A DNA stretch of 63,989 nucleotides, filler included, from Sluysia triapertura (GCA_046118255.1; 5 parts of 5 records of this genome joined end to end with filler, not necessarily neighbours in it), one strand, 5' to 3'; numbered from the whole stretch's first letter, positions 13,382 through 16,027 are shown. Program-made: numbers and translations. The notes: generated by a model not told the origin, from the letters alone.

Positions 13382-16027
13382 TTACCGATTATTTTTTAAT
13401 GTGGTAAAATTTTTGCTGGAACGTATTGACGATTTTGAATTGAATTTTTTAACAATGAAATTCAGTAATGACAATCGTGCACGTTTTTTGGTTTTGTAAT
13501 TATTAGAATCACAATCTAATGACTCAATTGGACTTATGATTAGGTTGCGTTTTTTGAGTGCTGGAGTGTGTGGACAATTGAATGATTGGATAGATTGGGA
13601 AACCAAAGGCGGCTTTGGTAGAGAAACTGAAGACGGCGTCGAAGGTGACGACTGATACGATCGTCTAAATTGAGGAATAAATGAAGGTGGTGGTGGTAAT
13701 TTGGATGTAGATTCAACATTATTAGACGATAGTGGTGTTTCAGATAAATACGACGTACTTCTATTACCATTAGAATTAGAAGGTGTGCTTAATGAATTTG
13801 CTGTTGGTGAACATTCATCAGATCTATTTTCATAACTTTTTCCTGAGGAAGAATAATATCCTATAGGGGTGAATGATGAGACAGTAGTGCTGTGATTATT
13901 AGGTGTTTGTATGCTGTAAAAACGTTTAGGAGCTAAAATTCTAAAAGGGTTTTCTGTAATGCTTTTACTTAAACTTTTATTGACGTCACATTGTTTAACA
14001 CAATCTATTTTAGATAACAAATTACAAATTTGAGTAGGTTCCTCATCATTACACTGCAATGCAGACGAATTATTAGAAGATTTCATAGGAAAATTAGATG
14101 ACACTCCGGGTACAAATTGTGATAGTTTTAATGGTGGTGTAAATTTTTTAGATATTTTTCGACGAGAGTTCAAAAAATTTAAATTCCGTGGCTTCCAATC
14201 TTCACTTTTTAATAAGAAACTCGGAGGTCCATCAATCCAACTAGGTTCCTCAACTTCCATTTCATAACCATCATCATTATCATTACTTTCTTCAGTTAGT
14301 TTATAAGCTTCTGGGTAGTGCTGATTTCTTACCACAATTGCGTTTTGACTGGAATTTTGTGATTTTTCCGCCACATTTAGATTATTTGCAGCATTTTCTT
14401 GAACTGATGTTTCTGAATCCATCGAAATTTCTTCATAATCGTTCTCTAATGCTATAATATCGTCTCTGGATTCAGCAAATTCACTTTCTTCTAAACCTTC
14501 GCCAATAAACCAATGAACAAATGCACGTTTGTTAAAAATTAATTCGAATTTACTTCGGTCTCGTTTCCATGCTTCACGAATACCGACATTTCCTGAAACC
14601 ATACATAGACAATGATTAGATGATGCTAATGGTAAATTTGGGACACTGACAGGAGGCATTGTATTGAGTCCTAATTTAAAACCAGTTGGACACCAATCAA
14701 CAAAAGATATTTTACGATCGCACTTAACTTTTACAACCGCATCATACACTTCACGAGGACTGATATAACCACGATATAGTAAACAACATGAAGTGTATTT
14801 ATAATTTTCAAAAGGACAGTCAAGAAAATGCGAATCTGATAAAAATACAGATCGAGTCAATTCATTAATATCCAATTTTTCATGATTTAATTGATTAGGA
14901 CTGATTATGGGAGCATAACTGAGCACGGGGAAATGAATTCTTGGATACGGTATTACATTGGTTAATAATTCATCAACATCAGTATGATGTGTACCTTCGT
15001 ATCGATATCGATGTGATAAAAACACACAGGTTATCATTTGACTAACCAAACGATTCATAAGTATGTATGTTGGTTTGGCACAACTTAATTGGTTAATTGC
15101 TTTTCGATATAATGATTCATTGTCAAACAAAATACCACAATCTATGTGCTCAATAGCAGTGTGTGTATGCAATAATGAATTATATGGATCAACTGTACTT
15201 TGAGACATAGTTGAAGATGGAAAAATGCCAACAGAAACTCGAAATTTTTTACCATAAATTTCTGATAAACTCATTAATAATAATGAAGTTAAACCAGACC
15301 CAGTACCACCAGAATATGAATGCATCAATTGAAATGCAGAGGTACTGTCGCAATTGTTAACTGTTTTTCGTATTGTGTCTAATAATGCTTGTAATTTTTC
15401 TTTACCGATTGTATAATACCCTCTAGCGAAATTATTTGCTGCATCTTCAATACTGTTTAGTAAAGTCGAAGGACTATACAAGAGTCTATATGCACCAGTG
15501 CGTATCTCATCTAAAAAATTTAAAAAATAAGTTAGTGTTTGAATTATTTAGATTTCATTTTATTTGTAAATTGGATAATTTTAACATTTTTGTGATGGTC
15601 ATTAAGATTTAAGTTTATTATATTTAATACATTATGTTAGAATTCCAATAATACCTTAGCGCTCGATTAATGTTTATGTTAGGTTTAATTTAAACAATGT
15701 GCCTAAATACCGGTACATTTTAAATCTAGTTTTCAGTAAAGCTAATGAGATTTTCGTTTGTTACTTTGCTAATTCACAATTATAATACCTACCAATTACC
15801 GTTGGTTCCAGATCAACAAAAACAGCCCTAGGAACATAGTGATCATTAGATTCATAAAATAATACGTCCACATGATCATTTAAAGATGTTGATTTATTAT
15901 CTGGACCAGAATATCGTAATTTTCCTTCGGCTGTTATACCATGTTCTACGCAATAAAGTTCCCATAAAGCACTCCCCATTTGAACTCCAGCTTGACCCAA
16001 ATGAATAGTAACGATTTCTTTAGGCAT
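13382..16027 (-). CDS. Divergent alpha-tubulin with ~350-aa C-terminal extension (787 aa, 2 exons)
   Basis: Exon 1 is 16027-15793 (MPKEIVTIHLGQAGVQMG...VPRAVFVDLEPTVI) and exon 2 is 15510-13382, separated by a phase-1 GT-AG intron. Alpha-tubulin motifs include EDAANNFARG, SGGTGSG, PYPRIHF, FVDWCPTGFK, KRAFVHWF and ENDYEE. Confidence 0.93.

What the first reader, a model, noticed from the sequence alone, without database searches (positions are those of the whole stretch)
13382..14425. Alpha-tubulin with a ~350-residue disordered tail replacing the EEY tail
Seen in sequence: after ENDYEEI the frame stays open for ~347 more codons with no intron. This is unlikely by chance at this AT content, and composition stays exon-like up to the stop. 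The tail has a displaced acidic patch (EESNDNDDGYEMEVEE), then a Ser/Pro-rich basic region with many S/T-P sites, SxIP/SxLP-like motifs (SFIPQFRR, SKLP) and a basic cluster KTKKRAR. Established: canonical alpha-tubulins end in a short acidic tail with terminal EEY/F, and SxIP motifs in basic Ser/Pro-rich context bind EB proteins. Inference: a tubulin with a built-in MAP/+TIP-like arm, possibly for a specialised structure such as sperm or cilia.
Basis: partly seen in the sequence, partly recalled or inferred. Interest (0 to 1): 0.75.

Follow-up and report, generated by a model that had tools for sequence, protein, structure and literature searches.

The report
Flatworm alpha-tubulin with giant disordered tail
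This is a real two-exon gene for a very divergent alpha-tubulin whose usual 12-residue acidic end is replaced by a 347-residue, mostly disordered tail, and the same design is conserved across a flatworm-centred clade of alpha-tubulins that nobody seems to have described.

Summary
On the minus strand, the frame stays open for 347 codons after the last tubulin helix (13385-14425, stop 13382-13384). The chance of this is about 1e-11, and the tail's G+C and codon-position pattern match the exon, not the flanks.

The tail is real coding sequence:
- An orthologue from another organism (L001) is saturated at synonymous sites. It still keeps one open frame through a 554-residue tail and shares short islands as conserved as the tubulin core.
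- On a tree built from the tubulin core alone, 16 proteins with tails of 229-672 residues form one clade (support 100). It holds trematodes, a monogenean, a cestode and the window's unnamed lineage.
- All four genomic loci examined have the same structure: one phase-1 intron, with core and tail in a single exon.
- A trematode contig with the two exons already joined looks like a spliced transcript that includes the tail.

The core keeps the GTP-site and catalytic residues. The tail has no relative outside its closest orthologue and is predicted disordered apart from one basic C-terminal helix.

No RNA data exist for this species, and the function is inferred only.

The parts
15793..16027 (-). 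Exon 1: start codon at 16027-16025, 78 codons plus the first base of a split Asp codon. Encodes the N-terminal GTP-binding part (GQAG loop). The N-terminus reads M-P-K-E instead of the canonical M-R-E-C.
   Evidence: Pfam Tubulin positions 1-59, E 2e-15. 63% identical to exon 1 of L001.
15511..15792 (-). Intron of 282 nt, GT..AG, phase 1, G+C 0.227, between ..EPTVI and (D)EIRTG.
   Evidence: An intron interrupts the coding sequence at the same place in L001 (53 nt, read base by base as phase 1), L003 (acceptor seen) and the Opisthorchis locus L004 (9.3 kb, from tblastn exon ends).
14426..15510 (-). Exon 2, tubulin core: equivalent to alpha-tubulin residues about 76-436, through helix H12 and the DYEE motif.
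   Evidence: Pfam Tubulin and Tubulin_C. Aligns end to end with alpha-tubulin chains 77-435, E 1e-119. N101, S140, G143-G146, N206, N228, D251, E254, R402 and the H12 acidic ridge are kept. pN 0.125 against pS 0.81 versus L001.
13385..14425 (-). Exon 2, tail: 347 codons in the same frame and same exon. Ser/Asn/Pro/Lys-rich, pI 9.2, net charge -11 in the first 80 residues and +22 afterwards.
   Evidence: No Pfam family, no solved relative, no relative except P0004 among 1.84 billion representatives. Mean pLDDT 43.
14222..14254 (-). Conserved island 1, at the end of the acidic patch: V-E-E-P-S-W-I-D-G-P-P.
   Evidence: pN 0.115 versus L001, the same as the tubulin core, although synonymous sites are saturated.
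14000..14035 (-). Conserved island 2: Q-I-C-N-L-L-S-K-I-D-C.
   Evidence: pN 0.18 versus L001.
13943..13951 (-). Conserved N-P-F tripeptide (tail residues 159-161).
   Evidence: Invariant in alignment A1. It could be chance. Its resemblance to EH-domain-binding NPF motifs is from memory and was not tested.
13679..13699 (-). Conserved L-P-P-P-P-x-F anchor (tail residues 243-249).
   Evidence: The proline run is conserved. The Ser and Ile-Pro of the SxIP readings are not.
13508..13558 (-). Conserved island 3: K-K-R-x-L-I-x-S-P-I-E-S-L-D-C.
   Evidence: pN 0.12 versus L001.
13442..13489 (-). Conserved basic amphipathic segment (K/R cluster, then L-S-L-x-x-F-I-x-K-K-F). It is the only predicted helix of the tail (tail residues 310-329).
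   Evidence: pN 0.25 versus L001. Helix in the AlphaFold2 model, block pLDDT 55-67.
13382..13384 (-). Stop codon TAA. G+C falls to 0.225 just downstream.
13209..13235 (-). ATTAAA (starts at 13235) and AATAAA (starts at 13214): candidate polyadenylation signals 150-170 nt after the stop.
   Evidence: Consensus match only, with no RNA evidence.

Best explanation
The finding is the C-terminal half of a genuine gene for a lineage-specific, highly divergent alpha-tubulin isotype. In its clade, which is known so far from flatworms plus the unnamed organisms of the window and of L001/L003, the short acidic E-hook has been replaced by a 230-670-residue tail. The tail evolves fast and is predicted to be intrinsically disordered. 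It is encoded in the same exon as the tubulin core and is translated with it. This much is shown.

The following is inferred. The core keeps everything needed to bind GTP, pair with beta-tubulin and act in a lattice. Because the tail starts right after helix H12, it would project from the outer microtubule surface. There it would replace the normal platform for tyrosination and glutamylation with a long flexible arm. That arm carries a few conserved short linear motifs and a basic amphipathic C-terminal helix. These would work as docking or cross-linking sites to partner proteins, membranes or the acidic surface of neighbouring microtubules. In other words, the tail would be a built-in MAP-like projection domain for some specialised microtubule array. 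I put about 0.85 on the identity and translated-tail part and about 0.35 on the projection/docking mechanism.
For: Open frame: 347 stop-free codons, P about 1e-11, with exon-like G+C and codon-position bias.

Orthologue L001/P0004: pS is 0.78-0.81 (saturated), yet a continuous frame is kept through a 554-residue tail. All length differences are in-frame. Islands have pN 0.12-0.25 against 0.125 for the tubulin core.

Tree on 360 core columns only: the 16 long-tailed proteins form one clade (SH-aLRT 100, stem 0.84), with a neodermatan subclade (99) and a window+P0004+P0006+P0007 subclade (93). Tails are 229-672 residues in all 16 and 11-46 in the 19 others.

Gene structure: the same two-exon layout with core and tail in one exon is seen in the window, L001, L003 and Opisthorchis L004.

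Transcript evidence: L002 carries a complete trematode coding sequence with the exons joined and flanked by UTR-like sequence, whereas Opisthorchis has a 9.3-kb intron at that position. L002 is therefore most likely a spliced transcript that contains the tail.

Core: functional residues are retained and it matches alpha rather than beta chains.

Tail: predicted disordered with one C-terminal helix. No stand-alone homologue of the tail exists.
Against: There is no RNA or protein evidence from the window's own species. L002 being RNA-derived is inferred from its structure, not from run metadata. The disorder prediction rests on a two-sequence alignment. Tails of the different subclades share no detectable sequence, so 'one conserved function of the tail' is an assumption. 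The 39 substitutions at positions that are at least 90% invariant in canonical alpha-tubulins leave open that the protein no longer polymerises. Nothing here shows where it is expressed or what the islands bind.
Confidence: 0.8

Rival explanations
1. Built-in +TIP arm. The SxIP-like motifs in the basic Ser/Pro-rich part of the tail bind EB proteins, so this tubulin recruits the plus-end machinery itself.
For: SKLP and SFIP sit in a basic, Ser/Pro-rich context without nearby acidic residues. The orthologue tail also has four SxIP-like motifs in its distal third, against 1.2 expected (p 0.03).
Against: In the window the count is 2 against 0.88 expected (p 0.22). None of the motifs is conserved in place, and SFIP aligns with D-F-D-Y beside the conserved LPPPP anchor. 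Neodermatan tails carry 0-5 such motifs with no pattern. The islands that really are conserved are different sequences.
Confidence: 0.07
2. Read-through artefact. The true mRNA ends or is spliced shortly after DYEE, and the long open frame is not part of the protein.
For: No RNA run exists for this species. One donor-like site (14332) and T-rich acceptor-like sites (about 13850-13950) exist in the tail.
Against: The open frame has a chance probability of 1e-11 and shows coding periodicity. In-frame amino-acid islands are conserved at saturated synonymous divergence, including one inside the only conceivable intron. The tail has exon-like G+C throughout. The same architecture occurs in 16 proteins, and there is a probable spliced transcript.
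Confidence: 0.04
3. Decaying or non-polymerising paralogue. A duplicated alpha-tubulin that lost its stop codon and its microtubule function, and now serves only as a scaffold or is drifting.
For: It is only about 45-47% identical to canonical alpha-tubulins. It has 39 clade-specific substitutions at otherwise invariant sites, including G142S in the signature loop. The E-hook, the terminal Tyr/Phe and the MREC start are lost.
Against: The core has pN/pS of about 0.15 against L001. The GTP-contact residues, D251/E254, the M-loop His283 and the H12 ridge are conserved in nearly all 16 members. The clade is old enough to span trematodes, cestodes and monogeneans.
Confidence: 0.08
4. Ancient gene fusion. 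The tail derives from a once separate downstream gene, for example a microtubule-associated protein, that was captured by loss of the tubulin stop codon.
For: The tail carries its own conserved islands and a terminal helix, as short independent proteins do.
Against: No stand-alone protein resembling the tail was found among 1.84 billion representatives, 5.8 billion clustered proteins, Pfam or the PDB. This concerns origin only and is compatible with the best explanation.
Confidence: 0.08

Closest known systems
Canonical metazoan alpha-tubulins (e.g. tubulin alpha-1B, PDB 3j8x/5gon)
   Same: Same fold and family over residues 77-435 (E 1e-119). GTP-site residues, D251/E254 and the H12 ridge are retained.
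   Different: Only about 45-47% identity, where alpha-tubulins are normally far more alike. There are 39 clade-specific changes at invariant sites. The start is MPKE instead of MREC. There is no acidic E-hook and no terminal Tyr/Phe. The tail is 347 residues instead of 11-18.
Uncharacterised long 'tubulin' predictions of parasitic flatworms (e.g. Opisthorchis viverrini T265_09922, Paragonimus P879_01968, Echinostoma, Calicophoron, Fasciolopsis, Dicrocoelium, Protopolystoma, Schistocephalus)
   Same: Same clade on the core tree (support 100). Same two-exon structure in the one locus checked (Opisthorchis L004). A long low-complexity tail follows DY.E in each.
   Different: Cores are 47-53% identical. 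The tails share no detectable sequence with the window's tail. Neodermatan tails have their own islands (an N-M-N-N-A-R..F-L-P-T-E-P block, a His-rich tract of 33-44 His, and a T-P-V-L-S-A-W-S end) and are near neutral rather than basic.
Beta-tubulin variants of Chytridiomycota and Neocallimastigomycota with C-terminal extensions of up to 1,100 residues (Findeisen et al. 2014, PMC4202323)
   Same: A tubulin with a very long, low-complexity C-terminal extension that is poorly conserved between species but supported by conserved gene structure.
   Different: Those are beta-tubulins of fungi, so they arose independently. Here it is an alpha-tubulin of animals, and short conserved islands are detectable between orthologues.
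Toxoplasma and coccidian alpha3-tubulin (PMC10056924)
   Same: A divergent alpha isotype with an altered N-terminal regulatory motif and an unusually long tail.
   Different: [quoted passage not shown] Those proteins also lack D251/E254, which are kept here.
FtsZ C-terminal linker plus conserved C-terminal peptide (analogy from general knowledge, not tested)
   Same: A tubulin-fold core is followed by a variable disordered linker that ends in a short conserved helix-forming peptide.
   Different: This is a bacterial homologue with no sequence relation in the tail. The resemblance is architectural only.

Membership tests
Alpha-tubulin | Tubulin GTPase domain plus Tubulin C-terminal domain | tested here: met
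   Pfam PF00091 (E 7e-32 for exon 2, 2e-15 for exon 1) and PF03953 (E 3e-30), all above the curated cut-offs.
Alpha-tubulin | Closer to alpha than to beta or other tubulins | tested here: met
   All of the best 60 solved-structure matches are alpha chains, residues 77-435. The protein nests among alpha-tubulins on the tree.
Alpha-tubulin | Nucleotide-contact residues and the catalytic D251/E254 of loop T7 | tested here: met
   N101, S140, G143-G146, N206, N228, D251 and E254 are present in the window and in 15-16 of the 16 clade members. G142 is Ser.
Alpha-tubulin | Short acidic C-terminal tail ending in Tyr/Phe (tyrosination cycle) | tested here: not met
   The tail is 347 residues, has pI 9.2 and ends ..K-N-N-R.
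Alpha-tubulin | N-terminal MREC autoregulation tetrapeptide | tested here: not met
   The N-terminus is M-P-K-E in the window and in L001. The functional consequence is inferred only.
Long-tailed flatworm-centred alpha-tubulin clade (defined here) | Monophyly on the tubulin core alone | tested here: met
   SH-aLRT 100 and stem length 0.84 on 360 core columns. This is the quick search only, with no bootstrap.
Long-tailed flatworm-centred alpha-tubulin clade (defined here) | Tail of more than 200 residues after DY.E, in the same exon as the core, and a single phase-1 intron after EPTV[IV] | tested here: met
   Window, L001, L003 and Opisthorchis L004. Tails are 229-672 residues in all 16.
EB-binding SxIP +TIP proteins | [ST]-x-[IL]-P in a basic, Ser/Pro-rich, non-acidic context | tested here: met
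   SKLP and SFIP at tail residues 241 and 248, followed by F-R-R-S.
EB-binding SxIP +TIP proteins | Motif more frequent than chance and conserved in orthologues | tested here: not met
   2 observed against 0.88 expected, p 0.22. The aligned residues in L001 are D-F-D-Y.
EB-binding SxIP +TIP proteins | Binding to the EB homology domain and plus-end tracking | not testable with these tools
   Needs a pull-down or live imaging.
Chytrid long-extension beta-tubulins | Beta-tubulin core | tested here: not met
   The core is alpha-type, so this is an analogue and not a member.

The most novel reading that the evidence does not exclude
Flatworms possess an ancient, clade-specific alpha-tubulin isotype that carries its own MAP-like projection domain. 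Under this reading it builds or decorates a flatworm-specific microtubule structure, such as the cortical microtubule rows or the 9+'1' axonemes of trepaxonematan sperm. The conserved terminal helix and islands would tether the lattice to membrane or to neighbouring microtubules. No Schistosoma member appeared among the named hits. From memory, schistosome sperm axonemes are atypical, which makes this a testable lead, but nothing here tests it.
Probability: 0.2. Interest if true: 0.8.

Novelty: new variant of a known kind. Interest (0 to 1): 0.6.

Why it matters
The C-terminal tails of tubulin are the main substrate of the 'tubulin code', and they are short and acidic almost everywhere. A review of apicomplexan tubulins calls a 48-residue tail extraordinarily long (PMC10056924). 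The only much longer extensions I found described are on chytrid beta-tubulins, and their function is unknown (PMC4202323).

Here a whole clade of animal alpha-tubulins has 230-670-residue disordered tails, conserved gene structure, an intact GTPase core and short conserved motifs. This would be a natural experiment in fusing a MAP-like arm to the lattice subunit itself. It occurs in a phylum with unusual microtubule arrays, and the named members come from parasitic flatworms. The members in public databases are only labelled 'hypothetical protein' or 'tubulin domain-containing'.

Tried and rejected
1. Word-based search with the tail alone found nothing at E <= 0.001, probably because low-complexity words swamped it.
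2. A profile of the two tails against 1.84 billion representatives found only P0004 itself.
3. The tail has no hit in Pfam or the PDB.
4. Local phmmer and blastp of the window tail against the other 14 tails found nothing significant.
5. An apparent resemblance between the C-terminal island and an island of P0006/P0007 scored below shuffled controls and was rejected.
6. A search with the 1014-residue Opisthorchis protein, meant to list only long family members, was swamped by tandem-tubulin mis-predictions and added no new members.
7. No RNA run holds the window sequence. The one run that holds it is kept as contigs and may be the source assembly.
9. Literature searches for flatworm long-tailed alpha-tubulins and for the database locus tags found nothing.
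10. Rfam found nothing in the window.
11. The first tree included tail columns by mistake and was replaced by the core-only tree.
12. The two exons were analysed separately by reference.

Full report
**What is there**

The finding lies on the minus strand. The start codon is at 16027. Exon 1 runs to 15793 and ends ..EPTVI plus one base. A 282-nt GT..AG intron follows (15792-15511). Exon 2 runs from 15510 to the TAA at 13384-13382.

I analysed the two exons separately by reference and did not join them. Exon 1 and the first 361 codons of exon 2 match Pfam Tubulin and Tubulin_C above the curated cut-offs. The exon-2 core aligns end to end with residues 77-435 of solved alpha-tubulin chains at E 1e-119, and all the best matches are alpha chains.

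**Is it more than chance?**

- With the tail's own base composition a stop is expected every 14 codons, so P(no stop in 347) is 1.3e-11. None of 20,000 shuffles was stop-free, and the other five frames carry 14-49 stops.
- G+C is 0.338 in the tail and 0.333 in the tubulin part of the exon. It is 0.227 in the intron and 0.20-0.225 in both flanks, and it drops right at the stop.
- GC3 is far below GC1 and GC2 in the tail, as in the core.
- Contigs of the only public run that holds this sequence cover the gene without any insertion or deletion. They show two substitutions in the tail, one synonymous and one Arg to His. That run may be the source of the assembly, so it only excludes a gross assembly frameshift.

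**Relatives**

A word search with the tubulin part found one protein at 81% identity (P0004, 921 aa) and two at 59% (P0006, P0007). It then found a block of flatworm proteins of 694-1068 aa at 47-53%: trematodes (Paragonimus, Opisthorchis, Echinostoma, Fasciolopsis, Calicophoron, Dicrocoelium), the monogenean Protopolystoma and the cestode Schistocephalus. All of these scored above ordinary 450-aa alpha-tubulins, which reach 45-47%.

I built a maximum-likelihood tree on 360 columns of the core only, with tails removed.
- The 16 long proteins form one clade with SH-aLRT 100 and a long stem.
- The clade splits into a neodermatan subclade (99) and a subclade holding the window, P0004, P0006 and P0007 (93).
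- Every member has 229-672 residues after the core. The 19 other alpha-tubulins on the tree have 11-46.
- This was the quick search without bootstraps. An earlier run that included tail columns was discarded.

Its position outside the neodermatan subclade suggests a non-parasitic flatworm lineage, but that is inference.

**The tail is translated**

P0004 is encoded on L001, a 3.4-kb genomic contig with an intron at the same position and phase but only 53 nt long. Comparing the window with L001 gives these figures:

| Region | Amino-acid identity | pN | pS |
|---|---|---|---|
| Tubulin core | 80% | 0.125 | 0.81 (saturated) |
| Tail, 316 alignable codons | 40% | 0.43 | 0.78 (saturated) |

The tail's conservation is concentrated in islands:
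- V-E-E-P-S-W-I-D-G, pN 0.115
- Q-I-C-N-L-L-S-K-I-D-C, pN 0.18
- N-P-F
- L-P-P-P-P-x-F
- K-K-R-x-L-I-x-S-P-I-E-S-L-D-C, pN 0.12
- a terminal basic segment L-S-L-x-x-F-I-x-K-K-F, pN 0.25

Between the islands the two tails differ by many insertions and deletions, all in frame: 347 residues against 554. A frame kept open over 350-550 codons in two lineages at saturated divergence, with islands as constrained as the tubulin core, means the tail is read in this frame.

Gene structure agrees. In Opisthorchis the gene spans 12.4 kb, with residues 1-79 in exon 1, a 9.3-kb intron, and residues 75-1014 in a single exon. L003 (P0007) shows the same acceptor.

L002 is a 3.4-kb contig from another run. It carries the complete coding sequence of a trematode member (P0013) with the two exons already joined and with UTR-like flanks. 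Given the intron in the other four loci, L002 is most likely a spliced transcript, so the tail is transcribed with the core in at least one species. This rests on structure, not on run metadata.

**What the tail is**

- It has no Pfam family and no solved relative. A profile of the two tails found only P0004 among 1.84 billion representative proteins.
- Tails of the other subclades share no significant sequence with it. One tempting island match to P0006/P0007 scored below shuffled controls.
- Neodermatan tails have their own conserved islands and a His-rich tract.
- AlphaFold2 with the two-sequence alignment gives mean pLDDT 43. There is no secondary structure except one helix at tail residues 310-329, the basic amphipathic end. 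The alignment is shallow, so this is weak support for disorder.
- Composition is 47% Ser+Thr+Pro+Asn+Gln and pI is 9.2. Net charge is -11 in the first 80 residues and +22 afterwards.

**The core**

- The nucleotide-contact residues, D251/E254, His283 of the M-loop, R402 and the acidic ridge of H12 are kept in the window and in nearly all clade members.
- 39 positions that are at least 90% invariant in canonical alpha-tubulins carry a different, clade-typical residue. Examples are G142S, L242H and N380G/T381N.
- The N-terminus is M-P-K-E in both the window and L001, instead of M-R-E-C.

- SxIP-like motifs occur twice against 0.88 expected (p 0.22). S/T-P sites occur 10 times against 7.1 (p 0.15).
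- The window's SFIP lies next to the conserved L-P-P-P-P anchor, where L001 has D-F-D-Y.
- L001 has four SxIP-like motifs elsewhere in its distal tail (p 0.03).
- EB binding is therefore not excluded, but it is not what selection visibly preserves.

**Most likely working**

The following is inferred. A polymerisation-competent alpha-tubulin isotype would project a long, flexible, mostly basic arm from the outer microtubule surface, because the tail starts right after H12. It replaces the normal acidic platform for modification. It would offer a few conserved docking peptides and a terminal amphipathic helix for attachment to partners, membrane or neighbouring acidic lattices.

The architecture resembles MAP projection domains and the FtsZ linker plus C-terminal peptide. 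These are analogies from general knowledge and were not tested.

**Comparison with the literature**

- Findeisen et al. 2014 describe chytrid beta-tubulin variants with low-complexity C-terminal extensions of up to 1,100 residues, supported by conserved gene structure. They do not mention flatworms.
- Searches for flatworm long-tailed alpha-tubulins or for the database locus tags found nothing.
- The family therefore exists in databases only as unnamed predictions.

**Verdict**

- Observation: confirmed.
- Interpretation: partly supported. The tail is real, conserved and predicted disordered. The EB arm is not supported.
- Novelty: a new variant of a known kind. The known kind is a tubulin isotype with a giant C-terminal extension. 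Here it is on an animal alpha-tubulin, clade-wide, with conserved short motifs.
- Missing: the main gaps are RNA or protein evidence in this species and any expression or localisation data.

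Noticed in passing
window 16016-16027 (-); L001 235-246: The protein starts M-P-K-E in both the window and its orthologue, and MGRE/MARE in trematode members, instead of the MREC tetrapeptide of canonical alpha-tubulins. From general knowledge that motif drives co-translational tubulin autoregulation, so this isotype may escape it.
   Followed up: partly
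L003 (P0007) and L001 (P0004), both from sample SRR33002330: The same sample carries two paralogous long-tailed alpha-tubulins (59% and 81% identical to the window's core), with similar G+C (0.41 and 0.40) and an intron at the same position. The P0006/P0007 tails (229-244 residues) have their own conserved, Lys-rich islands that look helix-prone (no structure prediction was run on them). Whether the window's genome also has this second paralogue is unknown.
   Followed up: partly
P0008-P0019 tails (neodermatan members): Trematode and monogenean tails share an N-M-N-N-A-R..F-L-P-T-E-P island, a His-rich tract (33-44 His per tail in most trematode members) and, in trematodes, a near-terminal V-Y-E-V-S..T-P-V-L-S-A-W-S island. 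None of these is present in the window's tail.
   Followed up: partly
(hit lists): No Schistosoma, Fasciola, Echinococcus, Taenia or Hymenolepis protein appears among the long-tailed clade members, although their canonical alpha-tubulins do. This could be loss, length or clustering filters, or missed gene models. It was not tested.
   Followed up: no
window 15511-15792; L001 458-510; L004 2238-11577: The single intron sits at the same codon but ranges from 53 nt (L001) through 282 nt (window) to 9.3 kb (Opisthorchis).
   Followed up: yes
window 13637 and 14163: Contigs of run X1 differ from the window at two tail positions: 13637 (synonymous, Thr) and 14163 (Arg to His at tail residue 88). There are no indels. 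They are possible alleles.
   Followed up: yes
window 12103-12720 (-): The next open frame downstream on the same strand (205 aa) has a weak, sub-threshold match to the CCDC92 coiled-coil domain (E 4e-4, 20.5 bits against a cut-off of 28.3). Its second half looks like non-coding read-through.
   Followed up: no
window 5176-6363 (-): Three open frames on the minus strand look like exons of another gene with no Pfam match. One contains a run of about 20 Asn residues encoded by a TTA/AAT triplet repeat at 5249-5304.
   Followed up: no
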